Source: Saccostrea echinata
Taxonomy: Eukaryota
Reading direction: 5' to 3'
DNA length: 64,000 bases
Assembly: GCF_033153115.1 (NCBI RefSeq)
Contig: NW_026889814.1
Span: forward strand, 930,001 to 994,000
In this document: one piece after another, positions 25,815 to 46,656 of the stretch
Layout: every line of letters starts with the position of its first letter
How positions within the stretch are numbered: position 1 is the first letter of the stretch
Notes under the pieces: model-generated
What the model saw: the letters and a program-made list of their open reading frames with translations, nothing else
The model's database searches: none
What the model was told of the DNA's origin: nothing
Program-made: the position numbers and the translations under genes

Positions 25815-27854
25815 TTCAGATTGTAAACTCTTTGTCGATTTATCCAATTCACCACCATTTCCCTGAGGTCGGCCAAATCTCTCCTCCAGGCTACCTGTCG
25901 GGAGGTCCCCACCACATGACACAGTCTCAGGAACACAGCCCTCAAAATATGCTGCAGACAGCTAACACAGGTTTCACTGACAAGACGAATGAAGATTTAT
26001 AAGATGATATATAATACCTGGTATTATTATTCTGTGAAAGACGTAAACCGTAACACATGCGCTTTGGGTCATTGACTGAATGTCGAAAAATATGCTTGCC
26101 CTAGGATTAGCGCGGTAAAGCAAACCGAGCTTGCGTGACAGAGGGCGAGCATATTTCCCTATTTTAAGTTAATAACCTTTGTTTTTTAAATATTTTAATA
26201 TTTTACGTTCTTTCTGATTCATATAAACGGAATCTCGTGGGTTTTTTTTTTTTTTTTTTTTTTTTTTTTGGTCATCATTTTGTCAGCATTTCAACAACAT
26301 AAGTTACTGAATGTTTTGTAGATAACTATAGTTTTTGACATATAGACTTGCGAGTCAATCGGATAATTAGATAAAAGTGGTAGCGGGGGCATTTACAGTG
26401 CGGGTATATATGGCTTTGTAAAGCCCGGGTCTATCGAAAAAAAATATCTGAATAATGTACTTCTTGTAAATTTCAATTTATTTCATTTTAAATCTAAGGG
26501 CAGTTTACTCCAGCTGCAAAATAAAATACCATGGAATCAAAACGCTTTAGTGTATAGTGTATAGAGGGTTCTAAAAATTCAGTAATTAGCAAACATATAA
26601 ACTTTTAAGATTTATTGTTTATCATTAACGATAGCGAATGTTTTCATGATTGAATAAATGTTATTTATGTTCCATTGATTGTCTAAATACCTTGTCGAGT
26701 TGACGAAGCTTGGTTTTTGACCTGACAGGCAGAACCAGTAACACAGTGTTGAATTGAAAAAAATGTTATTTAATCAAAAATGACGAATATAAAACTTGTA
26801 CAAATAATGGGGGTCAGAAAAGACTAGAAAACATTGACAAACAAAGAGTATCTTCAATAAGTATTATGCAATCTGACCCCCAACAAACATAACATAAAAT
26901 TACATGAGAATCAACTTCTCAATTACCTACAAAACACAACCTGCCTGTCCACCAAAAAAGGTGGGTTATCTAAAAAATAAATGCCAGAAATCCAATAGGA
27001 TATTGGATCCGTAGCGAATGTTTTCATGATTGAATAAATGTTATATAGGTAAAAAAAAATTCTATGTTTCAGAAATTAAAATAACATTTAAATTATAGCA
27101 AACTTTATTACTTATATTTACTTATTAAACGTTTTAGATTATTTTACTTACATGGATGATGAAGAATTGTTACCCATTTTTCAAGAGCAGCTGATAATCA
27201 TTCAAAGATAAAATTTGAAATAACTCATACGGAAATAATAATAATAATATATCCCTAATCTAGAAATTTTTAGTTTTTTAGTTTTAGTTTCCGCAATTCT
27301 TATTCACATTTTTTTACATTTTCAGAGTTCTATTTAAGGACATTTTAAAAATATATTTCCCTCAGATGCAAGCCAGAGAACGTGCTACGATTAGTGATAT
27401 GAGACGGCAAAACAGATAAGGAAACAAGGAACTTTTTAGACTTTTATATCTTTTTATATATTAGAGTCTTATTATTGCTATCAGAAACGTTTAAGAAAAG
27501 AAGTACATTCATGTTAACCTCTAGGAAAATGACTGGGATATACCATAGAACGATGGTCGACAGCGGCCTTCACTTTTGATTATGAATGTTGTCATATTAA
27601 ATAGGTTTTTTTTCAATTTTCGTTGACAAATTACAACTAAATTGGTAATGCTACATGTACAGTGACTTAACTGACAATTTTTACCGAGGGGGAAATCAAA
27701 ATTCTTTCGTGTGATATGAATTAAACTTGGATATATAATCAAGTTACAGGAAAGAGATAACATTGGTTAGATCAGTCTTTTGATAATTTGTTTATAACAA
27801 GACTTGTCTTAAGTTCAATCAGAGATTCGATTTTTGTATGAAATCGGACATGTC

Positions 27855-27985
27855 NNNNNNNNNNNNNNNNNNNNNNNNNNNNNNNNNNNNNNNNNNNNNN
27901 NNNNNNNNNNNNNNNNNNNNNNNNNNNNNNNNNNNNNNNNNNNNNNNNNNNNNNNNNNNNNNNNNNNNNNNNNNNNNNNNNNNNN
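27855..27985. other. Assembly gap
   Basis: Run of N. Confidence 1.
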
Positions 27986-28192
27986 AAATAATCACAGAAG
28001 TTACCTCTAGTTTCCGTTAGCGTGCCACTCTGAGGAATAATTAGCCGACTGGAAGTTTTCGGAGGATGCATTCACCATACAAGCGACATGTTTCCTTTTC
28101 TAAAGTTTTGTTTTGCTACATTTCAAAATCTTGAGAGTGGATGCTCTTATGTAGAGCTGGTTTTTCTACCTCTACGTAATAGGTAGAATTGA

Positions 28193-28556
28193 TTGATTCA
28201 TTGATTGTATGCTGTATTACGTCCGATTCGAGAATTTTTCACTCATATAGAGACGTCACTGTGTGCCAGTGAATGATTTCAAATTCAGACCTATATTCGA
28301 CACTTAGGGCCATTGAGCCATTGAGCAGTGAGGGTTCTATATCGTGCCAACACCTACCGTAACATGGGACCTCGGTTTTAAGGTCTCAAAAATCAATTGA
28401 CCCGTGACTTTCACCTTTACTGCCGGGCGCTTGGCGAAGGAACAGTCACTACCTATTTTTACGTCTTAGGTTTGATGCGGCGCGGCGAAGGAGAATCGAA
28501 CACGGGCCTCCCGATCACGAAGCGAACACTCTATCACTAGGCTACCTTTACCGGTT
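28193..28556 (-). mobile_element. Full-length tRNA-derived SINE with (CAAT)n tail
   Basis: Minus-strand head GGTAGCCTAGTGATAGAGTG...GTGTTCGATTC (A/B boxes). 13-bp TSD TAGGTAGAATTGA at 28180-28192 and 28557-28569. Sister copy at 61412-61743. Confidence 0.88.
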
Positions 28557-29289
28557 TAGGTAGAATTGAGTTGTTTCATATCTCCTGAGATATATTGATC
28601 TCTTCCAATGTAACAACTGTATTACTTTTATCAACCTTTTTTACAATCCCAAGATATTTTTAGTGATATGTAACAAAAAAGAAGCGACAAAATGACAATG
28701 CTATGTCCACCTTCTAGGATTATTTGAGTAAGGGATCTAAGGTTAATTAAGAGTAAAAATCGCTAAAATGCACGTTCTATTTTAACCTTATTTCTTCAAG
28801 TTACGTGTTTTATGTATCTTTAATTTTATATCACACGAAAGAATTGTTTTGTTTTTTTTTGTTTTTTTTTTTTTTTTTTTTTTTTGCTGGTGGAAATCGT
28901 CACCTGAATATCATATGTTTAATTTAAACATATTTTTATTGAATAAATCAATAAGGATCGGGAAACAGGCAAAGCCAATACATACCCTCTCCTTGTATAA
29001 TAGGTCAAGACAAAGACAATAAATAATAATACTTGTACATGATAATAAGAATACTAATAGTGAAAAGTAAAGATTCACAGACAAATATCATTCATCAATA
29101 TTATATTAAAAAAGAAAGAAAAAACAGATGATGACCCCATAATATTACATATAAATTATTTACTTACTGTTCCAGCTTTAATGTGAGTATTGTAAAACTG
29201 TACATTTATTATTACAATATACATAGTTTAGTCTAGCTCTTAGTAGATTTAATAATTTCATAAGTTTGTCTTGTTGACCAACACAGCCC

Positions 29290-30396: not shown

Positions 30397-31821
30397 AAAA
30401 CAAAAACAACAAAATAATCTCTACTCGATATCAGTTCCGCCAATTTATTATCAGCATCTCTTGGGGCTTTTATATTGCATGGAATTTTTATTTCTATCCT
30501 GCTTTTTTGTAACAAAGAGCAAGGTTAAATTAATTGCTTCAATTTTAGATCCGCCGTTTTTCAGTAGCGAGAATTTTTTTTACTGTATGCTTTACCTTAT
30601 CTACCAAATTATAATTACCTGTAACTTTGATATTTGCATTTATCGCAACAAGGAAAAGTAGTATTGCGAGTTTAAATCTCCAGAGTTCATTTAACCCCAC
30701 AAAGCAATTGAATTGTTTGACAATTCAAGTACATTCTTATACATGTAATTCCATGATGTATTGTTAGTTATATTTCAACAGGCTATATGAATACTGCCTG
30801 ATATTAAAAATTTTATATGACATAAGAAAAGGAGCATGATTAGATGGTAACCCTTAAACTTGGAGAATGTCTCCGAAAGGTGTGACTTCCGGTGTTACTG
30901 ATAATGAAATGACCAAACCAAACCTTTTGATCATAGAAAACGGTAATAGCACCAATTATACTCTGTGAAATTAACCCAAATTTCCACTATTGATGATTGA
31001 CCTGAAAGAGGTTTTCTTTTCTTTTTATTTAAATAATAATACGTCACTGATTTATGTTAGGAATGATGTAAACAAGGACGTCACTGCCTACAAAAAGTCG
31101 AAACTATCGATAGATTTGTTATTTTAGCTTTTGGTTTTAAATTCCTGTACGCACGTGTAAAGTTAAAAAAAGGGGCGAGGTAGAAACGTGTTCGTACATA
31201 TGTAACCACTGAAAAGTTTCCAAGCGAATATACATGTATAAGATACAGTTTCCTTCTATTCAACAATCATTGATGACGGTAGTAAGAGATTGTAAACGTT
31301 TTATATATTTAACCCTCTTACTACCAGAGGGGTCATATATGGGCTCTACCCACTGGCTGCCACAGGGGTCATATATGACCCATCAAAAATATTTTATATA
31401 AAGTTTTGAACTATTCAAGATTTAAGCTCATAATGTATTTATTCTTATGCATATCTTTGCTTAAAGTTATAGAAATATTGTATCTTGTCTGTGGGCATAT
31501 ATTGAAGTAGGCTACAATTGTGATATGTTGACGACGTCAAACTCACATTGATGACGTCAAAAACATCACAATAAGTTATAGGCTATTCAAGACCCTTTGA
31601 ATATGGACGTGGCAAATTATAAACATGATAAATAAAACAACAATCGAGCTCTCTTTTTTATTTAAATTATAGATTCATTTTGAGATCTTCAAAAAAAAAA
31701 AAATAATAAAAATAAATGGAATATTACAAAGATTCATGATTTTGTCACCGGGTTCACAGGTGCGTGAAAGTCAGTCATGACATCTGAGGGTCTTGGGTCC
31801 GAGACCCAACGTTGGTGCCAT

Positions 31822-32309
31822 TGTCAAGGGTGTTAAGTTTTTTGATTAACAGTTCTCGGATAAGAGAAAACTCCGGACAGCTGTTCAATGTAATTTATTT
31901 ATTTTCCATCGACATGATGGTATTTGATGCAGTATTTACGTTATATCATCAATGACATTGACAACAAAATACAACAATACAAAATAAATATAAGAAACAG
32001 TTAATAAATTCACACGAATCGTTTATCCCAGAAATGTCCGTGAACCGCGTGAGATCTCAATGTGTATTCACAGTTGTGCACAAGTGTCCAGCTCCATGGG
32101 CGCATCCATCTTGCTTGTGACGTCACACAATAGGAAGTACGATAAGGTGAAAAATTTCCCGGGAAGTCAGGTTTTCTCCGCCCATATAACGGTACTTTCG
32201 TTGAGTAGTATTAGTGAACTGGTTTGACTAGTGGCAGTGCGCACTCAGGCCGTAAATGAATTTACACAATGAATAGAATTAAATAGACACAGAAAACTCT
32301 CCTTTCACA
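31822..32309 (-). repeat. Second LTR-like unit: shares the last ~137 bp with the other LTRs, different upstream part
   Basis: 31822-31958 matches 32398-32536. On the minus strand it ends ...CCCTTGACA, followed by a PBS-like TGGCACCAACGTTGGG. Possible start TGTGAAAGG at 32309 (boundary uncertain). Confidence 0.65.
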
Positions 32310-32378
32310 ATAACCACCATGGATTTTCCATCGATGAAGTATTAATATGAAATATGAATATTACGTTTGCGCCGGAGT

Positions 32379-32396
32379 CCCCAACGGTGGGCGCCA
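32379..32396 (-). promoter_or_regulatory. Primer-binding site, tRNA-Lys(CUU)-like; a second degenerate copy lies at 31801-31820 (-)
   Basis: TGGCGCCCACCGTTGGGG, 1 nt after the LTR-terminal CA. The canonical Lys1,2 PBS is TGGCGCCCAACGTGGGGC. Confidence 0.75.
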
Positions 32397-32397
32397 T

Positions 32398-32927
32398 TGT
32401 CAAGGGTGTTAACTTTTTTATTAACAGTTCTTTGAAAAGAGAAAAGTCCGGACAACTGTTCAATGTAATTTATTTATCTTCCATCGACATGATGGTATTT
32501 GATGAAGTATTTAATATTTTATATCATCAATGACATGGTGATCTACAATAAATATGAAAACTTACGTACCGTCCATTCACACATTAAATATTTAAATGAA
32601 ATTTATATCAAATATTTAATTCATAAATTAATTTACTGAAAATATAAAATAGTTTAAATAAAATATCTTACCATGTAGACAGAATTTAAGCTCCTAATTA
32701 TAAAGCTATGGGCAATGACAGTCCTCGTAACGTCCGTCTATATCAGAGGGTTTTCATAAAGTGATTTAAAATAATATTACTGCAACTGCATGCAAAGGTT
32801 AAAAAACCAGTTGGAATAGAGAACATTTTAACTTCTGTGTGTACATAAGGGTAACAAGCGTTAGAAGTTTCAAGAACATGTGCAAATTATCATACATAGT
32901 AACATAGTAAATACTAATCCTGTGACA
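32398..32927 (-). repeat. 5' LTR, inverted relative to gag-pol and to the 3' LTR
   Basis: Minus strand reads TGTCACAGGATTAGTATTTAC...AACACCCTTGACA. 32400-32801 is the reverse complement of ~41846-42248, and 32877-32927 of 41659-41709. Confidence 0.9.
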
Positions 32928-33714
32928 TTTGTAATTTTCTTATTCATTTGTCATGTTTCATGTTCGCAAGTGAGTTTCAGTTGAGTGGTGGTAAAATTCG
33001 CGAAAACTTTATTTTCTAAAGAATCTTCAAAAGTTTATATAAACACATTGACCTGAAGACATTTGAAATCAACTGTTTGTTATCTAACAATCCCTCACTG
33101 CATGTAGTTATTCAGTTTTACTAACACTTAACAGCAGCAGCAGAGCAGATTTAGAGAAAATTCGGGAGAGTGTAAGTAAATCAGTTGTATAGTGATCTTC
33201 ACATCAGTTTCATTCTCATTTTCATATCATATCATTACATTTAGCATATCCAGCACATATTAGTTTAAAAATTTTAAGGCAGTCTAATTCAAAGAGATAT
33301 TATTCAGTCTAAATATAGTAATATAGATCTACAGTCATGGTGTTATAGCAATCAATCTAGATTCAATTTTTAGAGTACTGTAGTCAATATCTGCAATTTG
33401 AATCACTTTGAGTTTAGTTTAGTGTTATTCAGGGTAAGAAGTTAGCAAGTCAGAGTTGATATTATGGTTTAAGAGAATTTTGACAGATTTATATTGACTG
33501 TTTATTTTTGCAAGAAATTCAGGTGTTTGGTTACCAGATATTGAAATTCCACTCCACACCTCGATATGGCTCGACTGTGTTGAACGTTCGGAAATTTGTG
33601 CGAATTCGAAGAACGGTTTTTCAGCAACAACACGGTGAGTGATTCATGTTGTATTGTTTTAGAAAATCTTTTAAAATATCAGAATTTCTTTTTCTGATTA
33701 TTATCATTTTCACC

Positions 33715-34950
33715 ATGGCTAACGGTGAGACAGCTGGTAAAAAACCAGAAATACCTTAGCTGAGAAAGAAGAGAATGCTGATGACATTCTTGAACACATT
33801 GAAAAGGTGAATCAAAATCCTAACTATAGGGTATTAACTATGGAGGAGTATAATTTACTTGTATCTAGTACTCCAAAGACAGGTAAAGTTACTGCACCAA
33901 AATTTACATTTGGTTCCGCTATGGATCAGTTAGGGCCAAGAATGAAAGGTTTGTACAATGTCATGCACAAGGCTAAGCCTAAGACTGAATCTTCCAACCC
34001 AGTCCCTGAAACTCCTAATCCCAGTAATCACAATGTTTCACTTATTACCAGTCAACTGAGTGTGCCTAAATTACCTATCTTCAGTAGCACTGATGAACCT
34101 CAAAAAGGTGAAGTGAAATATGAGGTTTGGAGTTTTGAGGTTAAGTGCTTAAGAAAGAGTGAACAATATTCAGAACATGTACTTTTAGAAGCAGTTAGAA
34201 GATCTCTGAAGGGTTTAGCTCATTCAATGTTAGTTCCTCTAGGTGAAAATGCACGCTTGTCTGATATTATGCACAAGTTATATGGTTTCTTTGGAAATTT
34301 TTTTACAAATGAAAATCTTATGCAATCATTTTACAGTGATTTTCAAAAAGAGAATGAGTCAATTGTTATTTATGCATCTCGCATTGACGAAACAATTTGT
34401 AAAGCAATACAGTTTGGTTTCATTGATGAGATAACTAAAGATGCCATGTTAAAAACAAATTCTGGACAGGTTTAGCTAGTCAGTCATTGAAAAATTCAAC
34501 CAGACATTTGTATGACTCTATTAAAGATTTTCAACATCTTCTTAGGGAAATCAGAAAAGTGCAACAGAAGGAAGTTCATGCAAGTTCTCGCCTACCAAAA
34601 TCCAAGCCAGCAACAGTTCATGTAGAGAGAGCAGAAGTGAAAGACAGTCAGGAAGACCTAAAGAAAAAGCTCAGAATCTTGATATCGAAGATGGAAAGGT
34701 TAGAACATAGCATAACTCTCAGTCTTCTGATTATCAAGACATTTGTAGGAGATTAAGTAACTTAGAGGTACAACACAGTAGAAACATTTCTTCTAATGGT
34801 CCACTAGGTCCATACAGAGAAAATAGAGGTTTCAACAGAGGAAAAGGTTTTACTAGAGGTCAGAGTAGAAATCTGTCTAGAGGCAATTTTAGAGGTCAGA
34901 TGAGTAGGAAAGGAGAGAAATGACCCAAAAGGGCAACCTCTTCTGTTGTA
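33715..34950 (+). pseudogene. Gypsy gag (PNMA/Arc-like capsid), disrupted
   Basis: CACCATGG start. LPIFS...GEVKYEVWSFEVKCL...VRRSLKGLA...QKENESIVIYASRI. RG-rich tail. Stops and frameshifts. Confidence 0.8.
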
Positions 34951-37899
34951 GGGCAAACTGAGGAGGTCAAAGGTCATTGCCCTGGAACTGAAAAGTTGAT
35001 TTCTAGAATGGTTGGACATGCTAACCAATGTAAGGTCAAATTATGTGACAGAGAAAATGATGCATTGGTAGACACTGGTTCAATGAAAACTTGTATGTCA
35101 AAATAATTTATGAGTCTCTACAACCAAAGCCAGAACTTAGAAAATTGGAAGATTTTCAACTGGATGTTTATGGTGCAGGGGGTCACTCACTTCCCTTTTC
35201 TGGGTATATAGAGGGTGAACTTGAAATCCCATTTTTAAATCAGAATACAAAATTTGCCCCTATATTGGTGAGTCATTCATCAAATGAAAAGGGTGGTTCT
35301 GAGTTTCCATTGATAATTGGCACCAATGTTATCAGAAATTGTAAAGAGATTTTAGTAGTTTGGAATGTGTTTCAGAAATACCCGAACTATGGAACTTAGC
35401 ATTTAAAAGTATGTGTGACACTGCTTTGAAGGTCAAAACAAGAAACCATTTTCCAATTAGCATAAGTCCTAATGAGGTCAAAACGATAACGGGGTTAGTC
35501 AAAAATCTTATGACTTAGAAGCAGCAATGACTGAACAGTTAGATACTTCACAGTCAGAGAGTTTAGTCATTTGTCCTAGAGTCATTAATCTGAAATCCAA
35601 GATTGGGAAAACGTCTAGAATACCAGTTAGAGTTTGTAATTTATCTGCACAATCAATTAAGATCCTACCAAAGTCTGTCATCTGTTCAGTTAGCCCTGTT
35701 AAGGTAGTCGATTCATGGAGACCCAAGTCAGAGGAAGAGGCCATTGAAAATAAGGGAGATAACTCAGATATTTTTATTGAGTCTTTAGGTGCTAAGATAA
35801 ACAAACAGAATCTTACAAGTGAAGAAATGACAAGAACAACAGAGTTATTGAATAGATGGAAACATATCTTCTCAACATCATTTACAAATATAGGTAAAAC
35901 AGATTTGGTTAAGCATGAAATCAAGCTTACTGACAATTTACCTTTTAAGGAACCCTACGGGAGAATTTCACCTGGGATGTATCAGGAGGTAAGACAGCAC
36001 TTGAAAGAAATGCTTGATGCAGGTGCTATACGGAAGTCACAAAGTTCTTACTGTTCAAATGTAGTCTAAGTGAAGAAATCTGATGGGTCCTTAAGGTTCT
36101 GTATTGATCTGAGAAAACTTAACAACAAAACCATTAAAGATGCCTACACCTTAGAGTAGATGAGACTATTGATACTTTGATTGGGAGCAAATATTTTACT
36201 AAACTCGATTTAAGATCAGATTACTGGCAGGTCGAAATTAAGGAAGAAGACAAGCATAAAACAACTTTTTCTCTAGAGCCTTTGGGGTTTTATGAATGCA
36301 ATCAGATGGCATTTGGCCTGACCAATGCCCCGGCCAGTTTCCAACGTTTAATGGAAACCTGCATGGGTGATTCACATCTTAGAGAATGTCTTATATTTTT
36401 AGATGACATTTTAGTTTTTTGTCAGTCTTTTGATGAACATCTTAAAAGATTAGATGGAGTTTTTGAGAAACTTGAGAAACATAACTTAAAGCTTAAACCA
36501 TCCAAGTGTGAATTCTTTATGAGTGAGGTGAAATATTTAGGTCACATAGTGTCGGAGGAAGGTATCAAAACCGACCCAAATAAGATTGAGGCACTAAAGT
36601 CATGGCCAGTACCAAAGAATATTAAAGAATTATGCTCATTTTTAGGTTTCACAGGATATAAGCGGCGTTTCATCAAAGACTATGCCAGAGTAGTTCAGCC
36701 ACTTAATGAGTTACTGGTGGGACACCCAACAGCGAAAAGAAAGAACCAGGGAAACAGGAAGAAAATACCATGGTTATGGGGTAAGGAACAACAATTTGCT
36801 TTTGAGACACTTATAAGTAAGTTGACAAATCCCCCTCTTCTCGGCTATGCAGATTTTTCTAAACCATTCGTCTTGAATATTGATGCCTCCACTGAGGGCT
36901 TAGGTGCTGTTCTCTATCAGAACCAGAATGGTTTAGAACGGGTGATTGCATATGGCAGTCGTGGTTTAAAGAAAAGCGAGAAGTTGTATCCAGCACATAA
37001 ACTTGAGTTTTTGTGTTTAAAATGGGCAGAAGTCGACAAGTTTAAAGACTATCTATACAACAATTCTTTTGAAGTTAGAACGGATAATAATCCGTTGACT
37101 TATGTCACAACTTCTGCAAAACTCTATGCCACAGGTCATCGTTGGCTTGCTGCTTTGAGCAATTACAATTTCAGGATATATTACAGATCTGGGAAATTAA
37201 ATCAAGATGTAGACGGGTTATCCAGACGTCCATATCATCTCCAGATTTTTCCAGAGGCTGTCAAAGCAGTTTGTCAAGCAGCTCTCATTGACCGAGAACA
37301 ACTTCCATTAGCTGAGAGTCTACTCATTACAGACACTGGTCAACTCAACCCGGATATGACTGAAATAGAATCACAGGAACTGAGTACCGTTAACTGGAAA
37401 GAGAAGCAGGATGAACATCCAGTGATAAGTAAGGTTAAGTACTTGTTAACAACTGGTGAGAGGTTAGATTCTGAGAATGTTGATATAGAGACAGAGGAGG
37501 TTAAGAAGTATCTTAGAGAGAGGAAAAGTTTTGAGATAAGGAAAGGTGTATTGTTCAGGAATACACAGATGGATGGGATGAATATAAGGCAACTTGTTTT
37601 ACCAAAGAGTATGATAGGGACAATTTTCAAAGGTTTACATGAAGATATAGGACATCAGGGAAGGGAAAAGACCAGTTGGCTTGTCAAGAAGCGTTTCTAT
37701 TGGCCAGGAATGAATACTGATATGAGAGAGAAAGTTGGGCATTGTGGGCGATGTGTTAGAAGTAAGACCAGGGAACATCCTAGATCAGAGCTTGTTACCA
37801 TCAAAACATCGCAGCCAATGGAACTAGTATGTATAGATTTTCTTTCTTTAGAGAAGTCCAAGGGTAACATTGAGGACATACTAGTTATTACAGATCATT

Positions 37900-40048
37900 C
37901 ACAGGACGAAAGACCATCTTTCAGCAATCGCTTAATGGTGGCTTAATGGTAGCTTAATGGTGGCTTATAGAAGTCAATTCCTTTAAGCCACCATTAAAAT
38001 GCAGCTTCTAGGTGCTTAATGTCCAAACATCATTAAGCTACCATTAAGCCACCTTTAAGCTGCAGCTTAATGGTGGCTTAATATCCAAACTTAATCAAAC
38101 CACCTTAACGCATCCAGTATCAAGTCTTTAAACTAACTTGTTAAGTTTGAAGTTGTTTCAGAATCATTTACGCAAATACTTATTCAATTCATAATTTTTT
38201 TTCTCGCTATTTCTAACATCTTTGTCAATGCGTATAAACTCGGGAACTGAGAACAGCTTCACCAAATGCCTTAAAATTTTCGCTACCTAAAATCAGTTTG
38301 TTTGAATACTTGTGTTAAAATTATTTTTATCCATAAATACATAATATATATTATTTTTTTTTTAAAAAATCACATATTTTCCTTCCGTGTTTGGAGAGCC
38401 ACGTTCCGCTGTCGAATTCATAGGAAATGTTGTAATTAGAGTCATTTTCTGCTGGAATATCTCTAAGTCTCTTAATTTTTCTTTGGGTAGAGAAATGTTT
38501 AAGATATATAAAAAAAATATAGGTATAGATTATATTGCCCATCATTGAATTACTTCATGAATAATTTGAATTAATTCGTGGTTAAGTGCCTTTATTTTTT
38601 CCTTTCTTTTAAAATACTGCAGAAGTAAGAATTTATTTAAAATAATGCAGCAGTAAGAATTGATCAAAATATAGTCGGTCTTCAATGATTGTTATTTCAA
38701 AATCAATTTTCAGAAGAACAGCCGATCAGATTAAACAGGGCATCCGACCAGATTTATACACATTGAGAAGCGGGGTAAAATAATCAGTGTACAGTATATC
38801 GACTAGTTAGACAATAGACCTTGATTAGGTGTCCCCACTAGTCCCCGGTCAATTAACAGGAAACTATACACGGGAACGTACAGTGACAGATTTTGATGAT
38901 ATATTATTTTTACAAAACTTAAAATTTACGCAAGCATATAACAAATTAGAAATTATGATTGTACACAAAAAGACAATTATTTTGATACCCATAATGATAA
39001 AAAAGAATTAAAACTGAAGATGATATGTTACAAAAATATTTTATAACTTACTTGTTACGCAAAGATTGTCAAAAATCGTAAATAGCCGCAGCATATATAT
39101 AAGAACTATAATCTGTTTTTTTTTTCCCCATCGTTCTCTTTCGATGATATATTCCTTTTTTATAACAAAATTTTGTTATATCTGTTGAATTTTAATCTTT
39201 TCATGCTTATAAATCTGCGAATAACAGAACGAGGAATTCAGTTACTTAAAATCAAAGGGTTGTTTCACACGATCACACCGAATTCCGGTCCACGGTTAAG
39301 AAATATTAACGTAATATAAAACTTTATAAAAATTTCTTTTTTCAAAAATATATAAATAAAATTATTTGTATTATTGATTAATAAATATAAACATCAGAAA
39401 AAAAATACATGTACAGGTACCTTTAACCATTCCAAACAAGTTTTGTTAAAAATAAAGTTGTTATATTTCACACCATTTTCAACAGCCTCGATAGCTCAGT
39501 GGTTAAAGCGTTCGTCCTCCAATCTAAAGGTCGAGGGATCGAATCATGTTGGGAATGTTCTTTTTTTTTCATTTATTTTTTTTTTTTTAAATTTTCTTTC
39601 TTTAACATTATTTTCGCCGAATTCACAAATGTATAAACTCGACATTTATAATTTTTGTGAAGAAATCATTATAAAAATAATATTTAACCCATAAAAGCAG
39701 TTTTATCGACTGCGTAATGGTGACTTAATGGTGGCTTAAAGGTGGTTTATTGGTAGCTTAATGGAGTTTGGACATTAAGCACCTATAAGTCTGGCTTAAT
39801 GGTGGCTTAATGGTGACTTAATGATTGTCTAGAAGCTACCATTAAGCACCTATAAGCCACCATTAAGCTACCTTTAAGCATCCATTAAGGACTTTGAGAT
39901 GGCTTAATGGTAACTTAATAGTGGTGTATTTATTACTTAAATGTAGCTTAAAGGTGCTTAATGGTGACTTAAAGACAACCATTAAACCCTCATTAAGGAC
40001 CTATAAGCCACCATTAAGCCAAACTAAAAGGAAGTGTTTCATCTTGTG
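37900..40048 (+). mobile_element. Non-autonomous CACTA/EnSpm-like DNA element inserted in the integrase
   Basis: CACAGGACGAAA...TTTCATCTTGTG termini. 3-bp TSD ATT (37897-37899, 40049-40051). Subterminal CCACCATTAAGC arrays in both orientations. Excision restores VITDHFSKYAVA. Confidence 0.88.
39485..39550 (+). other. tRNA-like (Pol III A/B box) segment inside the CACTA-like element
   Basis: GCCTCGATAGCTCAGTGGTTAAAGCG...GGGATCGAATC followed by T runs. No acceptor-stem closure. Confidence 0.55.
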
Positions 40049-41658
40049 ATTTCTCAAAGTATGCAGTTGCTGTCCCTACACGGAATCAGAAAGCTACAAC
40101 AACAGCTAAAGCGCTTTATGAAAATTTCTTCTGTTATTATGGATTTCCACAGAGAATACACTCGAACCAAGGCAGGGATTTTGAGAGTAAGTTAGTGAGA
40201 GAGTTATGTAACATCGCAGGAGTAAGTAAAAGTAGTACAACCCCTTACCATCCTATGGGGAATGAGAATGTAGAACGCTTTAACCAGACTTTATTGAAGA
40301 TGTTAGGTACGCTTGAGGATTATCAGAAAGAGGACTGGAAATCCTACATTAAACCTTTAGTGCAAGCCTACAATGCTACAAAGCATGACACCACAGGGTA
40401 TTCTCCACATTATTTGATGTTTGGATGTCACCCAAGACTTGCCATTGATGCTTACCTAGGATTGGATGAGTTGTCTGAAAAGCCTAGGAGTAGGGAAGAC
40501 TATGTGGATAAACTAAAGAAACATTTAGATTTTGCCTACAAAGTTGCTAGGACAAATATGGATAAAAACACAGACAGATACAAACAGAAGTATGATAGCA
40601 GAGTTAGAAATTCACAACTAGAAATAGGAGATAAAGTATTGATCAGAGTTTTAGTTAAGTCAGGAAAGAGCAAATTATCAGACAAATGGGAAAAAGAACC
40701 TTACAGGATTATTGACATTCCAAATCCAGAAATACCAGTTTACAAAGTCCAAAAAGATTCAGGTAAAGGAAAGATCAAAACTTTACATAGAAATTTATTA
40801 TTACCATTTATGTATATTTCAGATACCACTATTCCCACAGAAGGATTAAGAAGATGTCCAATGAAAACAGAGAAACAGACGAGACAGTTTACTAGATTAG
40901 TTGAAAAGGAGGATTCAGAGGAGACCTAATCATCGAGTGAGGATGAGCTGTATAGAGTACGTACAGGTAAGAGAGGTCGGACTAAGCCTGATACATCAAG
41001 TATCTACCAGTTAAATGATTTTCAAAAATCTTTCGGTACCGAGGGCAAAGTAAGTTCCGACAACTTAAGTCGTGGTTATCGTCAATCAACACAGTTCGAT
41101 CCAGATTTGACTGTAAAGACAGACAAAGAGTCTCACATTCTGTCTGTACCCAACATTGATTTACCACCTTTATCCCCATCTTTACTACAAGATGGAGATG
41201 TTAAAAGTGTAAGTCCTGTTACTGTAATTTCACCGCCTAGATCTCCTAGGAGATCTACCAGAATAAAAAAACCCTCCTGATAGATTTGGTAGTTGGTATG
41301 TGGGAAATCAGCAGGTTTGGTATGTATAAGTGACACAGAGAAATCAAGAAGTTGGTATATGTAAGTGACACAGGGAGAGAATATCACAGTATTTTATGAT
41401 ATTGAATTAAACTATAGATGCCATGATAGTGGTACATGGACTCTACTGTATATAGTTTTATGACTTGATAATGGTTACAATATATGTAACAATGGAGTTT
41501 TATGACGAGATGGTTATGATACATAACAGAGTATTTTTATGACTTAATGCTTATAATGCATATTAGATTTGTTACTTTAGTATTTTTCATAGTATAATGA
41601 TTCACAAATTATTTTCAGATAAAATGTCAGGAGACATTTTCCTCTTGCACAGGGAGAA

Positions 41659-42250
41659 TGTCACAAGATTAGTATTTACTATGTTACTATGTATGATAAT
41701 TTTCTCATGCGTCATCTCATTCATTCATTCATTCATTCATGGTTTGTAAGTTCATGACCTCTGATGTCATACCGTGAGTATGGGATGTGTATGGGTGTGT
41801 TTGACTGGTTTTTCCAGTCATTGCGCATGGCTGGCGCGAACTTTATTAACCTTTGCATGCAGTAATATTATTTTAAATCACTTTATGAAAACCCTCTGAT
41901 ATAGACGGACGTTACGGGGACTGTCATTGTCCGTAACATAGCTTTATAATTAGGAGCTTAAATTCTGTCTACATGGTAAGATATTTTAATTAAACTATTT
42001 TATATTTTCAGTAAATTAATTTATGAATTAAACATTTGATATAAATTTCATCTAAATATTTAATGTGTGAATGGACGGTACGTAAGTTTTCATATTTATT
42101 GTAGATCACCATGTCATTGATGATATAACATATCAAATACTTCATCAAATACCATCATGTCGATGGAAGATAAATAAATTACATTGAACAGTTGTCCGGA
42201 GTTTTCTCTAATCCAAGAACTGTTAATCAAAAAAGTTAACACCCTTGAAA
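41659..42250 (+). repeat. 3' LTR of the Gypsy element
   Basis: Begins TGTCACAAG immediately after the PPT. Ends CACCCTTGAAA (CA changed to AA). Contains AATAAA. Confidence 0.88.
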
Positions 42251-43003
42251 ATTTCATATATAGCATAGTATTCTAAAGAGAAGGCTTGAAATCTTTGTTA
42301 GCAATTTTAAAAAATTGAATTATATTTTTGCAAAGTATGATCAGTATACTAGTATTGTCTTATTTTTTTCCATAGAAACACAAATAAACTTAGGATGTTT
42401 GGATGTTTCCCTTTCGTGTTATTAAGGGGTTGACCATTTGATCCGGGGGGGGGGGGGGGTTATCAGAATTTGAAACCAAACACTTTGCCTTTGAAAATTT
42501 TGCATATACATGTGATTAATAATCTCTTCTCCACTAAGAACTATGGGAAGTTTTCTAAGTGAAAAAAGAAAATAAAAATTAAGTTAAAAAAACTGTCCCT
42601 TAGGTATAAATGTTCTGTCTGCAAGGGTATTAAAATAAACAATCTGATTCAAGAAAATCACCACCACGCACCATCCCCTGGGAATTTTAGTGTTCAAAGG
42701 TTAGTTTAATAAATATAATAAATAACTCTTTACATGACTGACTGAAATTTTGAATTAAGTCTAGGATTGCTTAATGATCTTGAGTATACAGAATATATAC
42801 AGGAAAATTAGTTTATGAAAATTTATCTCATTAAAAATAAATCAAATCAGAAAAATGTCTATTTTGTAAACAAACAAAAAAAAAACTACCCTAAATCCTT
42901 GCGTTGGAAACAAAAATTAAATAAATAAATAAAAAAAAAAGGAATGGGAATAATAGAAAATCATATCAGGAGAACTACAAATGGATCACAGGACCTATGA
43001 ACA

Positions 43004-43036
<33 letters not shown>

Positions 43037-44086
43037 GGCAAATAGTTTATGTTTTGAAATAAGGCATCTTCAATAAAATATCGATTATCATTAAGATAAA
43101 GAAAAAAAAATACTTTTTCGCCCGCACCAGCTATGGTTACATATTGATGAATCCGTTTCTGTGGAACATTTCTGATTTCTTTAGTTCCGATGTGTTTCTG
43201 AGCACATTAACATCCCCTCCCCTTTAAAAAGGAAAAAAAAAAAGAAAAATACAAAATCTTTTCAAGAGAGCACGTATTTTAATAAATTTGTTTCAGTATT
43301 CAAAGATAAATTCAAGATTTTGCATTATCCACACACTGCACATTCCGAGACTCAGTCTTACACTCAGAAATGTTGCCAATTTCTGTTGACCCCCCCCCCC
43401 CCCCTGCTGGGGGTGTTTATGATTCTCCATGCCCCTTTGCTTGAGTCAGAAAAACATCCACATTATCTTTGTCCAGCTATGCCACTGAAATAAACATCTT
43501 TAACATTATTCATGTTCTTTATCCTTTAGCTGTACATATGTACTCTTGAAAATTTTCGTTATTTGCAACCGACCCTGATATCGAAATTTTCCATCAATAA
43601 GAGAAGGAGAAAGTTGGAGGACAGATTGCTTATAACACACATACTATTGGTGGAAACTGTCATGTTGTAAATATTGAATTTACCGGGTGGCAGTAAATAC
43701 ATAATTTACAACATGACAACTGCCACCCTGTAAATTCAAAATTTACAACATGACAACACTTGTACAAGTTAAAGGTATTTTTGAGGTGAAATCATATCAT
43801 ATTTTACACTTCATGATAGTAAATTAAATTATAAGATTAAATTTGTTTAGCCCAATTTATACCCAAGGTATATATGTACTTGCTCAATTTTGGTTGGAAG
43901 AGTTTCAAATTAGTTCTTTCTTCTTAATAAACGGCTTTCATTGATTGGATTTGATCTGCTACAGTTTTCCAATTCTTTTTTCTGAAACAGATCGTTTTAC
44001 CATTAAAAAGAAAAATTTATAATCAATGTCTTTATCCATTACATGTATGACGATCAATGTCTTTATCCATTAAATAAAACATATCA

Positions 44087-46656
44087 GTAGGTGCTAACTT
44101 CAGCATGTGGGAAGTTTCTAGTATGCCGGTCCCCAGAATCATGCGATTGCGCATGAGCAGTTATTTCCCTTGCCGTTGCTATGCAGAATGTAAACAAACC
44201 GCCATTTTCCCCTCGCTTCAACAAAACGCATTCGATCGAGTGATTAGGCTTAGGGTATATTGTTTTAAGATTGGAACTGTTTTATAAATCCACTCTTAAA
44301 TCTTCCTGACTTTGGGCTAATTCATGTAATTTTTGCTTACAAAAGGCACTGCAAAGTGCCTTTTGTGACCAAAAACTTGCATGGATCAGCCCAATTTCGA
44401 ACCGTGCCGATATACAATCTTATAGGAGTAAAGCATTAACTTAAACAAACCGTTAATTAAATATGGCATTGTATGCGATCTACGGATTAGGGTTAGTGTA
44501 TACATGTATATAGCTCGGATATTGTAACTGTTTTATATTCACCCATCCTCGCATCTATATCACTTTGGGCTTATGCATGCAATTTTTGCCTACAAAGAAC
44601 CGGAAGAACAGGAAAGTTTTGCGAAACTTGGATGAATTAGCCTTGGTCTAATGTTGAAACATGCCCGATATTGTGCGCTAGGTTTTGGCAAGTAATTGGT
44701 AAAAGCGACTTACCGTTTACTTAAGCTCGATATCCTAACCTCCTAATGTCCATATTAAGAATATTTTTTCTTTCAAATCAATGGTGATGCACAATTCAAT
44801 CAACCAATTACGAGTAATTAGTTATCACTTGTTAAATCCCTGCATTTCTCACAAAAATCTCGTAATTTTAGTACCATTTCACTTTGAGTCATATCAGCTA
44901 CTTCTTCATCAGTCTTCATTACGTCAAAACACAAGTGACGCATGTCATGAATATTTATGAGATTACGTCAAAAACTGATCATGTGACCACATTCCTAAAC
45001 AACGTAAAATGGAGTTTTATCTCCTAAACAAGTACGTTATTTTACGAAACCTTTTAATTCTCATTTAAAAAACTGTGTTTAAAAAACCCCAGTTTTTAAA
45101 CACAATTTTTCACAAGGAACACGATTTCTGGCTCAATTTTGCGATTTGTGGCCTTTTTTTTTTCGATTTTGTCGATCGCTGTCGCGATCGTATTATATTG
45201 TACACAGCCTTCGGCGGCACCTATTTTAGCGCCATATTTATAGGGACCGGTTTACTAGAAGTGTTCCCAGCATGTTGCGTGATATTTTGTCATTAATAAA
45301 CATCGCATTGTTTGCACCTAATGGGATGTTGAATTAAGTTCCTTAATAAACCCGCTACTCTGTCAGACGTAAGTCTCTTGATTGTACTGTTGTGTGTTGA
45401 ACCTTCATACAATAATATAGGTCTCATGTATGCAATAGAGAGGAAATCAGTATCTCCTCACATACCTCTGCATCAAGCCTAGTATCAGAGATAAGTTTAA
45501 AGTAAAGTTAATAAGTCCGGGAATGATGAAAATTTTTATAATAATTTTATAACAAAAGGTCCTTTGGAGAAACTATGCAACAGGGAAGCCTATCCCTTGT
45601 CATACAGTCTATACAGTCCAATGAATAAGTCTTGGTATTCCTCACCATGGATAATTAGATAAAAACAGTTACGAAATACCCCTGATACGCATTTTTATGA
45701 TAAGTTAAAGGCTTATCCAGAAACACTCTAAAAGACTCCTTGGACACCAGTAAGGCATTATGTTTGTCTGAATCATCCAGAAAACTACTTTCTCCACATG
45801 AAAGGAACACTGTGACAGTAAAACTTATCCTTATCTTCCAATGCATTGTCGATTCCCTCTTTCGAGTAATTTTTATACAAGCCATAGTCTTTCTAACAAG
45901 CCATGAGCAAGTCCGAAAATTAAAAGTGATTCGTTGAGTTCACAAGATTTTGCACTGCCAGATAGAAAGAAATTCTTCATTCATTGTCGTAACGGTTTCC
46001 CAGTTTTTGTCGGCTACTAAATGACATCCATTTTGGATTATGTCACAAAAATATGAGGTTGGGGCCATGATTGGCATCTGTCTACCCAAGAGGAGGCAGA
46101 TGGGGCCAAAGTCACTGCAAGACACTGGTCGTCATCATTGACATACACTGTACAAACCACGTACAGTTCCGGTGTTGCATGGCCCATATGGAACAGTATT
46201 AGGTGTTAATTTTATTTCAAAACTGTAAAATTTCACTGTAACCAGAACTAGATATTTACAGTCTCCCATCTAATACAACACATGTTAGCGAAATTGGATG
46301 GGTTATCTCAAATGTATCTGAAGCAAAGAAAATCCTGTGGACTACTAGAACAATCGTAAAACAATGATTTTTTGTGACAAAATGTTTCAGATCATACAAA
46401 GGTTATTTGCATTATGTCCAAATCAGATCTTTTCAGTCGGAACCCTTCTTTTCGACTTCCACGTTCCATTTCTAGGTCGTAAACTCTCCGTCGATTAACC
46501 TGCTTAACCACCATTTCCCTATTGTCGGCCAAATCGTTCCTCCAGAGAAGCTCTCGGGAAATCCCCACTATATGATACAGTTTTACGAATATAGACTTCG
46601 AAATACGCTATATAGCCATAGGTGAGGAAAATCGGACAAAAGAACGAAGGTTCCAT
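44087..46656 (-). pseudogene. Decayed cGLR paralog, interrupted by a DNA transposon and lacking the TPR-encoding 3' part
   Basis: 45268-46620 aligns by eye to ~24552-25960. It reads FVKLYHIVGISRELLWRNDLADNREMV...MERGSRKEGFRLKRSDLD, then many indels. About 20 bp more homology lies left of the insertion. Confidence 0.85.
44109..45267. mobile_element. Non-autonomous DNA transposon, GG...CC ends, ~25-bp imperfect TIR, 8-bp TSD (superfamily unassigned; Merlin-like is possible)
   Basis: GGGAAGTTTCTAGTATGCCGGTCCC versus GGGACCGGTTTACTAGAAGTGTTCC. CAGCATGT at 44101-44108 and 45268-45275. Confidence 0.82.

What the first reader, a model, noticed from the sequence alone, without database searches (positions are those of the whole stretch)
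31743..42250. Gypsy retrotransposon with inverted LTRs: a precisely flipped 5' cassette bounded by integrase-type ends, TSD preserved
Seen: the 5' LTR (32398-32927) is the reverse complement of the 3' LTR (41659-42250), and both PBS motifs lie antisense to gag-pol. The flipped block 31743-32927 starts TGTCAC and ends GTGACA. ATTT flanks the whole unit. Re-inverting that block in silico gives a canonical layout: ATTT|TGTCACAGG-LTR-PBS-...-gag-pol-PPT-LTR|ATTT. Established: DDE-integrase LTR elements have direct LTRs; inverted terminal repeats are typical of tyrosine-recombinase DIRS elements, which this is not. Inference: an inversion breakpoint exactly at the LTR att end and at an att-like GTGACA ~60 nt past the PBS suggests an integrase- or replication-linked flip. 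That could be a family trait, a non-canonical replication route, or a switch that points the promoter away from gag-pol.
Basis: partly seen in the sequence, partly recalled or inferred. Interest (0 to 1): 0.9.

Follow-up and report, generated by a model that had tools for sequence, protein, structure and literature searches.

The report
Botched retrotransposon copy with flipped head
A dead Ty3/gypsy retrotransposon in an oyster-like genome has its first kilobase flipped, most likely because one round of reverse transcription went wrong before the DNA was inserted, so it is a one-off molecular accident and not a new way of replicating or a genetic switch.

Summary
The left LTR, PBS and 440-nt leader (31951-32927) are the reverse complement of element positions 1 to about 1039. 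The gag-pol body resumes at position 1033, so one breakpoint is shared. Two paralogous empty sites confirm the 4-bp ATTT duplication around 31743-42250.

Its outer 216 nt consist of:
- the first 35 nt of a Helenus tRNA-bearing mini-LTR;
- a copy of tRNA-Lys(UUU) nt 38-76, including CCA;
- a second R-U5-like LTR piece from a different parent copy.

So re-inverting the block does not give a canonical element.

The junctions lie at or near landmarks of reverse transcription:
- U3 nt 1 with an unprocessed TT;
- roughly the predicted start of R;
- a tRNA read-through that stops beside nt 37;
- Helenus U3 nt 1;
- the Gypsy U5 end.

Three full-length sister copies have direct LTRs, and the junctions are unique in the genome.

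Best reading (0.6): an aberrant, multiply template-switched cDNA that was then integrated as one unit. It is not a family trait, a switch or a DIRS-like design. HIV-1 proviruses and plant LTR elements show comparable defects.

The Helenus-Gypsy chimera may be physical evidence of co-replication. Other agents of this scan already noted Helenus elsewhere in this genome. I could not check reads: no sequencing run was listed.

The parts
31739..31742 (.). Left copy of the 4-bp target-site duplication (ATTT)
   Evidence: The empty-site paralogs L063 and L062 carry a single ACTT between ATG and CAT.
31743..31777 (+). First 35 nt of a Helenus (tRNA-bearing TRIM) LTR, starting at its nt 1 (TGTCACC...). 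Looser similarity runs on to about 31794.
   Evidence: 100% identical to the 5' end of many genomic mini-LTR copies (144 first-look candidates, 40 scored). These copies carry a tRNA-Thr(GGT)-like module, a Lys PBS, a PPT and 4-bp TSDs. The family is described in PMC10886601.
31778..31781 (.). Four unassigned nucleotides (TGAC) at the Helenus/tRNA junction, where the anticodon loop would lie
   Evidence: They match neither Helenus (ATAT) nor tRNA-Lys nt 34-37 (TTTA).
31782..31820 (+). Copy of tRNA-Lys(UUU) nt 38-76 including the non-encoded CCA. Read on the minus strand it is a PBS extended to 39 nt.
   Evidence: 35 of 39 positions match the genomic tRNA-Lys(TTT) gene plus CCA. Canonical copies match the tRNA for only about 20 nt.
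31822..31958 (-). Second, partial LTR (about LTR nt 448/455-592, R-U5-like), preceded by the single spacer T at 31821
   Evidence: It is 96-98% identical to other genomic copies but only about 92-93% to this element's own LTRs, and it lacks the small insertion those two share.
31951..32374 (-). Canonical 5' leader of the Gypsy element (about positions 616-1039), inverted. 31951-31958 is an 8-nt microhomology (ATGTCATT) shared with the partial LTR.
   Evidence: 93% identical and collinear with the leader of three full-length sister copies.
32375..32396 (-). [quoted passage not shown]
   Evidence: Sequence. The same motif follows the 5' LTR in sister copies.
32398..32927 (-). Inverted 5' LTR, ending at U3 nt 1 (..CCTGTGACA on the + strand)
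32806..32884 (-). 79-nt foreign patch inside U3 of the inverted LTR, replacing about 95 nt, with a further 32-nt deletion nearby
   Evidence: 87% identical to the single-copy sequence C18:2893794-2893872. Flanked by the microhomologies GCACATG and ACTGGT. Absent from the 3' LTR and from 22 other LTRs.
32928..32929 (.). TT between U3 nt 1 and the body. It is the complement of the AA that ends the PPT, the mark of an unprocessed cDNA end.
   Evidence: PPT/LTR border GGGAGAA|TGTCAC at 41652-41664. All sister copies read AA, not TT, before TGTCATTTTG.
32930..41658 (+). Gypsy body from about position 1033: gag (33807-34475), RT/RNase H/integrase zinc domain (36177-37946), integrase core (40195-40929), PPT (41649-41658). 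The reading frames are broken into pieces.
37900..40048 (.). Later nested insertion of a 2149-bp non-autonomous DNA transposon (TIR CACAGG.., 3-bp TSD ATT, subterminal 11-bp repeats) inside integrase
   Evidence: Absent from sister copies. 597 candidate matches in the genome.
41659..42250 (+). 3' LTR in normal orientation. Its terminal CA reads AA.
42251..42254 (.). Right copy of the target-site duplication (ATTT)

Best explanation
The 10.5-kb insert is one aberrant reverse-transcription product of a tRNA-Lys-primed Ty3/gypsy element. It was built before integration by several template switches or end-joinings among replication intermediates, then inserted once by integrase.

Read on the + strand it consists of:
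1. Helenus LTR nt 1-35.
2. tRNA-Lys nt 38-76 with CCA.
3. The complement of U5-R.
4. The complement of leader-PBS-LTR down to U3 nt 1, plus TT.
5. The body from position 1033 to the U5 end.

The left part looks like the 5' end of a minus-strand DNA with its tRNA primer still attached and copied into DNA (a read-through past m1A58 that stops beside nt 37). That strand jumped by an 8-nt microhomology into the leader instead of to the 3' R. It ran to the 5' end of a plus strand (U3 nt 1 plus the two unprocessed nucleotides) and was then joined to the body at the same place.

The outer ends are the Helenus U3 end and the Gypsy U5 end. Both have family-type termini (TGTCAC... and ...GACA) that integrase could use, which would give the 4-bp duplication.

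Shown: the anatomy, the duplication and the uniqueness. Inferred: the order of the switches, and whether reverse transcriptase or nuclear end-joining made each junction. The copy had no promoter upstream of gag-pol from birth.
For: - One shared breakpoint: the inverted block ends at about position 1039 and the body starts at 1033.
- A true 4-bp TSD around the whole unit, shown by two empty-site paralogs; 4 bp is the norm for both families.
- The inverted end is exactly U3 nt 1 plus TT, the complement of the PPT-terminal AA. Integrated copies never carry these two nucleotides. Two-nucleotide 3' processing is described in PMC5408687.
- tRNA-Lys nt 38-76 with the post-transcriptional CCA abuts U5. 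It matches 35 of 39 positions, and no other genomic locus could have served as template.
- The left terminus is nt 1 of a Helenus LTR, 100% identical over 35 nt.
- Microhomologies at the junctions: ATGTCATT, and GCACATG/ACTGGT around the U3 patch.
- The partial LTR comes from another parent copy, while the two full LTRs share a private insertion.
- The same classes of defect are documented in HIV-1 proviruses: tRNA-Lys3 inserts of 7-54 nt, junctions at the 5' end of R, inversions and asymmetric LTRs (PMC12657518, PMC9278108). Complex plant LTR elements with TSDs are described in PMC1950507 and 10.1101/452573.
Against: - It needs at least four or five switches or joins in one molecule that still integrated, which must be very rare.
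- The junction at U3 nt 1 shows no microhomology, so reverse transcriptase and end-joining cannot be told apart.
- The start of R is only predicted from a TATA-like box at 42092-42099 and an Inr-like TCATTG at 42114-42119. A small palindrome at that spot, and a nearby deletion breakpoint in the C16 duplicate, suggest an alternative: a fragile or pausing site.
- The U3 patch could be a later gene conversion.
- There are no reads, no second assembly and no orthologous empty allele.
- The first six bases, TGTCAC, are shared by the Helenus and Gypsy LTRs.
Confidence: 0.6

Rival explanations
1. Post-integration chromosomal rearrangement. A canonical copy inserted at ATTT. Later its first 1 kb was inverted by two breaks or by replication template switching (FoSTeS/MMBIR), and filler DNA, perhaps captured retrotransposon cDNA, was inserted at the left junction.
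For: Microhomology at the leader/partial-LTR junction and around the U3 patch. The locus has since suffered other changes: a nested transposon, and a duplicate with a 13-kb deletion.
Against: One break would have to fall exactly between the TSD and LTR nt 1. The inverted end carries TT (the PPT complement), not flank sequence. The filler begins exactly at nt 1 of another LTR. The tRNA+CCA/U5 join has no genomic template.
Confidence: 0.15
2. Helenus first. A Helenus LTR or TRIM inserted here and owns the ATTT duplication. Later most of it was replaced by a rearranged Gypsy cDNA captured at a break, joined on the right through the shared terminal GACA.
For: Helenus also makes 4-bp TSDs and is abundant. 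Both LTRs end in GACA. A second Gypsy/Helenus neighbourhood exists at C42.
Against: The right junction would have to fall within the last 4 nt of both elements, and no Helenus sequence survives on the right. The inverted U3 junction and the shared 1033/1039 breakpoint would still need a cDNA-level accident.
Confidence: 0.1
3. Half-site autointegration. Integrase joined the element's own U3 end into its leader before the other end integrated into the chromosome.
For: The junction is exactly at the LTR terminus, and the orientation is that of an autointegration inversion product (mechanism in PMC2644782). Seven nucleotides (TGTCATT) occur on both sides.
Against: Integrase joins the processed CA-3'OH, yet TT is retained after CA. 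The overlap is 0-7 nt and ambiguous, not the family's 4 bp. This model does not explain the tRNA/Helenus block.
Confidence: 0.08
4. Assembly artefact: a mis-join or inverted contig piece.
For: No reads could be examined. Repeats are error-prone to assemble.
Against: The junctions do not lie in long identical repeats. The inverted LTR differs from the 3' LTR by 3-6% and by a patch. The leader occurs only once, so this is not a fold-back duplicate. There are no N's. The junctions have biologically specific positions.
Confidence: 0.05
5. One reading: a family trait, a non-canonical replication route with inverted LTRs, or a reversible promoter switch.
For: Only the existence of this copy.
Against: All three full-length sister copies have direct LTRs (further 5' LTR-PBS ends and solo LTRs are also canonical) and the structure is unique. 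The integrase is DDE-type with no tyrosine recombinase. The copy is degraded, and no repeats flank the flipped segment that could flip it back.
Confidence: 0.02

Closest known systems
Defective HIV-1 proviruses made by aberrant strand transfer (PMC12657518) and proviruses with inversions or asymmetric LTRs (PMC9278108)
   Same: tRNA-Lys primer read-through inserted after the PBS (7-54 nt there, 21 nt beyond an 18-nt PBS here). Junctions at the 5' end of R after completed strong-stop synthesis. Integrated copies with inversions and unequal LTRs.
   Different: Here the element is an invertebrate Ty3/gypsy, germ-line fixed and old. Several defects are combined in one copy, and one terminus comes from a different, non-autonomous element.
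Complex LTR retrotransposon insertions from abnormal template switching or recombination before integration (Sabot & Schulman 2007, PMC1950507; 10.1101/452573)
   Same: A composite element bracketed by a single TSD, with LTRs that are not each other's closest relatives, explained by events outside the chromosome.
   Different: From their abstracts, the plant cases describe fusion or recombination of two elements before integration; I did not read their orientation details. This copy has an inverted 5' LTR, a tRNA copy and a Helenus terminus.
Helenus, tRNA-bearing TRIMs (TRIMp3; Kojima 2024, PMC10886601)
   Same: The left 35 nt belong to such an LTR. In this genome the family has a tRNA-like module, a Lys PBS, a PPT, 4-bp TSDs and tandem arrays. 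The paper proposes Gypsy helpers that use the same tRNA primers.
   Different: Only the first 35 nt are present here, fused to Gypsy replication intermediates. The paper inferred the helper from PBS similarity, not from a physical chimera.
Retroviral autointegration products (PMC2644782)
   Same: An LTR end joined to an internal site in inverted orientation.
   Different: Autointegration uses processed CA ends and gives dead-end circles. Here TT is retained and the product is integrated in a chromosome.
DIRS elements
   Same: Inverted terminal repeats.
   Different: DIRS use a tyrosine recombinase and make no TSD. This element has a DDE integrase, a 4-bp TSD and canonical sisters.

Membership tests
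Ty3/gypsy LTR retrotransposon | pol order RT - RNase H - DDE integrase, with gag upstream | tested here: met
   Pfam hits to PNMA-like gag, RVT_1, RT_RNaseH, Integrase_H2C2 and rve_3 in that order on the + strand.
Ty3/gypsy LTR retrotransposon | TG..CA LTRs, a tRNA PBS after the 5' LTR, a PPT before the 3' LTR, and a short TSD | tested here: met
   LTR termini TGTCAC...TTGACA, a Lys PBS, the PPT ACAGGGAGAA, and 4-bp TSDs in at least 11 copies.
Ty3/gypsy LTR retrotransposon | The two LTRs are in direct orientation | tested here: not met
   Inverted in this copy. Direct in sister copies C18:5364070-5372753, C18:2910336-2917930 and C6:4590931-4599627. The family is canonical; this copy is an aberrant member.
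DIRS-like (tyrosine recombinase) element | Tyrosine recombinase instead of DDE integrase | tested here: not met
   Only DDE-type integrase domains were found.
DIRS-like (tyrosine recombinase) element | No target-site duplication | tested here: not met
   A 4-bp TSD was verified against empty-site paralogs.
Helenus / TRIMp3 (source of the left terminus) | A short LTR with a tRNA-like Pol III module; a PBS and PPT in a very short internal part | tested here: met
   ARAGORN and Rfam call a tRNA inside the ~134-bp LTR. The unit is 243 bp with PBS TGGCGCCCAACGT and a PPT.
Helenus / TRIMp3 (source of the left terminus) | 4-bp TSD in animals | tested here: met
   GAAA (L036) and TTTG (the L042 array).
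tRNA-primer read-through product (deferred second-strand transfer) | U5 and PBS continue into tRNA-complementary sequence beyond nt 58, including the complement of CCA | tested here: met
   39 nt, 35/39 identical to tRNA-Lys(UUU) nt 38-76 plus CCA. Canonical copies diverge after about 20 nt.
Minus-strand strong-stop DNA as source of the partial LTR | The partial LTR begins at the transcription start (5' end of R) | tested here: inconclusive
   The boundary lies at LTR nt 448-461, next to a TATA-like box and an Inr-like TCATTG. No RNA data were available: no run was listed.
Integrase autointegration product | A processed CA-3' end joined directly to the target, with the family's 4-bp duplication | tested here: not met
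   CA is followed by TT, and the overlap is an ambiguous 0-7 nt.

The most novel reading that the evidence does not exclude
The insert is a single cDNA chimera made inside one particle that held both the Gypsy element's and a Helenus element's replication intermediates. That would make it the first physical evidence of which autonomous Gypsy lineage co-replicates with, and so probably mobilises, the tRNA-bearing Helenus TRIMs of bivalves. It would also be a germ-line fossil showing that invertebrate Ty3/gypsy reverse transcription makes the same errors (tRNA read-through, misdirected strong-stop transfer, inversion) now being catalogued in HIV-1 reservoirs. A possible second Helenus/tRNA-Lys/inverted-U5 junction at C42:2078190-2078300 hints that such joins recur.
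Probability: 0.4. Interest if true: 0.5.

Novelty: new member of a known kind. Interest (0 to 1): 0.35.

Why it matters
This copy does not overturn the rule that DDE-integrase LTR elements have direct LTRs; it is an exception produced by an accident. Its value is as a well-preserved record of reverse-transcription errors in a mollusc:
- a tRNA-Lys primer copied as far as the anticodon loop;
- an unprocessed U3 end caught in a junction;
- a terminus borrowed from a Helenus mini-element.

If the chimera arose in one particle, it links Helenus to a specific Gypsy helper, which so far has only been inferred from PBS similarity. For annotation, it warns that LTR finders will mis-call such loci, and that LTR-pair dating fails when the LTRs have different histories.

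Tried and rejected
- **Whole left tRNA-like unit as one tRNA.** ARAGORN found no tRNA in 31500-32500. The 5' half resembles tRNA-Lys no more than shuffled sequence does (p about 0.06). So the left 35 nt are read as Helenus.
- **Rfam.** A scan of 30.5-43.5 kb gave only sub-threshold miRNA-like hits in the nested transposon's repeats.
- **Two adjacent, independent elements head to head.** Rejected because the inverted leader stops (about 1039) where the body starts (1033), and one TSD brackets everything.
- **Recombination between oppositely oriented copies.** Rejected because it preserves the canonical layout.
- **Fold-back sequencing artefact.** Rejected because nothing is duplicated in mirror image.
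- **Concerted autointegration circle.** Rejected because the left neighbour of the inverted leader is an inverted, not a direct, U5.
- **Donor of the U3 patch.** The ORFs there gave no meaningful Pfam hit.
- **LTR comparison.** It could not date the parts, because the family is a star-like burst with about 95% pairwise identity.
- **A slip on my side.** The script printed a majority line over the ~600-nt LTR alignment to count shared differences.
Full report
**Setting.** The window is G000:C65:930001-994000 of a 923-Mb eukaryotic assembly. Other agents' notes call it an oyster genome. Between 33.8 and 40.9 kb the + strand encodes a PNMA-like gag, RT, RNase H, the integrase zinc domain and the integrase core, split over several ORFs. 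This is a degraded Ty3/gypsy element. Its 3' LTR is 41659-42250, preceded by the PPT ACAGGGAGAA.

**Check of the observation.** The inverted repeat is real. 32398-32927 matches the 3' LTR in reverse complement over 297 nt (97%), 78 nt (96%) and 53 nt (94%). I aligned the window to three full-length sister copies (C18:5364070-5372753, C18:2910336-2917930, C6:4590931-4599627), all with direct LTRs. Window 31951-32927 is the reverse complement of element positions 1 to about 1039: 5' LTR, PBS and a 440-nt leader. The body follows from position 1033 in normal orientation. The inverted piece stops where the body starts, so these are the two sides of one breakpoint, not two neighbouring elements.

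The flanks belong to an older host repeat. Two paralogs (C1, C30) read ATG-ACTT-CAT across the site, while the window reads ATG-ATTT-[insert]-ATTT-CAT. The 4-bp duplication is therefore genuine. Four bp is also what at least 11 other copies of the family show.

The outer 216 nt of the 'flipped block' are not part of a canonical element.

- 31743-31777 is 100% identical to the first 35 nt of a ~134-bp mini-LTR present in hundreds of copies. These often sit in 243-bp tandem LTR-internal arrays. They carry a tRNA-Thr(GGT)-like module, the PBS TGGCGCCCAACGT, a PPT and 4-bp TSDs. This is the Helenus type of tRNA-bearing TRIM described in bivalves (PMC10886601). Earlier notes of this scan reached the same name.
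- 31782-31820 matches nt 38-76 of the genome's tRNA-Lys(UUU), including the non-encoded CCA, at 35 of 39 positions. After a single T it runs into the complement of the LTR's last ~140 nt (31822-31958).
- Canonical copies are complementary to this tRNA for only about 20 nt. The extended junction occurs nowhere else in the genome.
- This partial LTR is closer to other genomic copies (96-98%) than to the element's own two LTRs. It also lacks a small insertion that those two share.
- The inverted LTR itself carries a 79-nt patch in U3. The patch is 87% identical to a single-copy sequence on C18 and is bounded by the microhomologies GCACATG and ACTGGT.

So re-inverting 31743-32927 does not restore a canonical element.

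**The junctions.**

- *Left end.* The TSD is followed by nt 1 of the Helenus LTR.
- *Helenus to tRNA.* The join lies in the anticodon-loop region, with four unassigned nucleotides. The tRNA copy ends at nt 38, next to position 37. From general knowledge, position 37 is hypermodified in tRNA-Lys(UUU) and blocks reverse transcriptases.
- *tRNA to U5.* CCA, one spacer base, then the U5 end. This is the structure of a primer joined to minus-strand DNA.
- *Partial LTR to leader.* An 8-nt microhomology (ATGTCATT) at LTR nt 447-454 and leader 1032-1039. It sits next to a TATA-like box (42092-42099) and an Inr-like TCATTG (42114-42119), so it is near the predicted start of R. That is inference only.
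- *Inverted U3 nt 1 to body.* The sequence reads ..GTGACA-TT-TGTAATT... The TT is the complement of the AA that ends the PPT. It is what a minus strand would carry if, as in retroviruses, the free cDNA has two extra base pairs that integrase removes (general scheme in PMC5408687; not shown for this family). Sister copies read AA, not TT, before that body sequence.
- *Right end.* The Gypsy U5 terminus, then the TSD.

**Interpretation.** Every boundary sits at or near a natural end or stop of a reverse-transcription intermediate, and a single TSD brackets the whole. I therefore favour (0.6) a pre-integration origin: a multiply switched or end-joined cDNA that integrase then inserted, using a Helenus U3 end and a Gypsy U5 end. 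Both ends have family-type termini.

One consistent path is this, although its order is inferred. An elongating plus strand leaves the full minus strand at position 1039 for a second strong-stop DNA that still carries its tRNA-Lys. It reads through the tRNA to nt 38 and finishes on a Helenus plus strand. The strong-stop DNA in turn copies that plus strand to its 5' end and continues on the full minus strand from position 1033.

The retained TT and the lack of a 4-bp internal duplication argue against integrase having made the flip itself. Nuclear end-joining of free cDNAs cannot be separated from switching by reverse transcriptase.

**Comparison with known cases.** HIV-1 reservoirs contain proviruses with tRNA-Lys3 inserts of 7-54 nt, junctions at the 5' end of R, inversions and asymmetric LTRs (PMC12657518, PMC9278108). 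Plant genomes hold complex LTR elements with TSDs attributed to abnormal template switching or recombination before integration (PMC1950507, 10.1101/452573). The present copy is a new, unusually rich example of that kind. It is not a new kind. It is not DIRS-like, because it has a DDE integrase and a TSD.

**What remains open.**

- No reads or second assembly could be consulted, so misassembly is judged unlikely only from the nature of the junctions.
- A 95.5%-identical segmental duplicate on C16 keeps only LTR nt ~462-592 plus the right flank. Its deletion breakpoint lies 1-3 nt from the partial LTR's boundary, at a small palindrome (TCATTGATGA). This may mean that the site is fragile rather than the start of R.
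- At C42 a complete Helenus LTR, followed by tRNA-Lys nt 49-76 in sense and 11 nt of inverted U5, lies 6 nt beyond another copy's 3' LTR. This may be a second such join, but I could not fetch more sequence.

Noticed in passing
L042 (C27:10205787-10206172), C18:1565377-1566002 and many others: A Helenus-type TRIM family with a ~134-bp LTR holding a tRNA-Thr(GGT)-like module, PBS TGGCGCCCAACGT and PPT AAAGAGGGGGAATA. Units of 243 bp are often in tandem LTR-internal-LTR arrays; there were 327 first-look candidates. Its LTR termini (TGTCACC.. / ..CTGTGACA) resemble those of the Gypsy family studied here (TGTCACAGG.. / ..CCTTGACA).
   Followed up: partly
window 37900-40048: A nested 2149-bp non-autonomous DNA transposon inside the integrase gene. 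It has TIRs starting CACAGG/CACAAG, a 3-bp TSD (ATT), subterminal arrays of the 11-mer CTTAATGGTGG, and 597 candidate matches in the genome. It looks CACTA/EnSpm-like.
   Followed up: partly
L065 = C16:17116680-17120065: A 95.5% segmental duplicate of window 27242-28705 joined directly to 42120-44176. It keeps the same mutated LTR end and ATTT junction but lacks 13.4 kb. The breakpoint in the LTR lies within 1-3 nt of the partial LTR's boundary in the window, at the palindrome TCATTGATGA (42114-42123). The coincidence is unexplained.
   Followed up: partly
L002 2094-2290 (C42:2078183-2078380): The 3' LTR of another Gypsy copy is followed by ATTATA, a complete Helenus LTR, TT, tRNA-Lys nt 49-76 in sense (with a 6-nt gap and CCA), T, and 11 nt matching the inverted U5 end of that copy (10/11). 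This is possibly a second Helenus/tRNA-Lys/inverted-U5 join. PBS plus inverted PBS form an 8-bp hairpin there.
   Followed up: partly
L079 1501-1579 (C18:2893794-2893872): The single-copy donor-like sequence of the 79-nt U3 patch. It lies in the sense direction of a 114-aa ORF with no meaningful Pfam match.
   Followed up: partly
L031 1061-2133 (C18:5364060-5365130): This sister copy has an odd 3' end: the first ~80 nt of an LTR, then ~390 nt, then a full LTR preceded by the same 12 nt (caattaaataaa) that precede its 5' LTR. Its flanks do not form a clean TSD (TAAA vs TACA).
   Followed up: no
L004 and L005 (C59:1367670-1368254, C30:18808490-18809074): Two 5' LTRs with identical 12-nt upstream flanks and identical scores. 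This is probably the same locus present twice, either as a duplication or as an uncollapsed haplotype.
   Followed up: no
L071-L077 (C2:25.155-25.208 Mb): A repeated tRNA gene cluster with the unit tRNA-Ala(TGC), tRNA-Lys(TTT), tRNA-Arg(CCT), tRNA-SeC(TCA), present at least nine times.
   Followed up: no
window 31343-31742 and 42251-42650: The insertion target is itself an old interspersed repeat, with at least 36 and 26 matches at 70-87% identity. That is what supplied the paralogous empty sites.
   Followed up: yes
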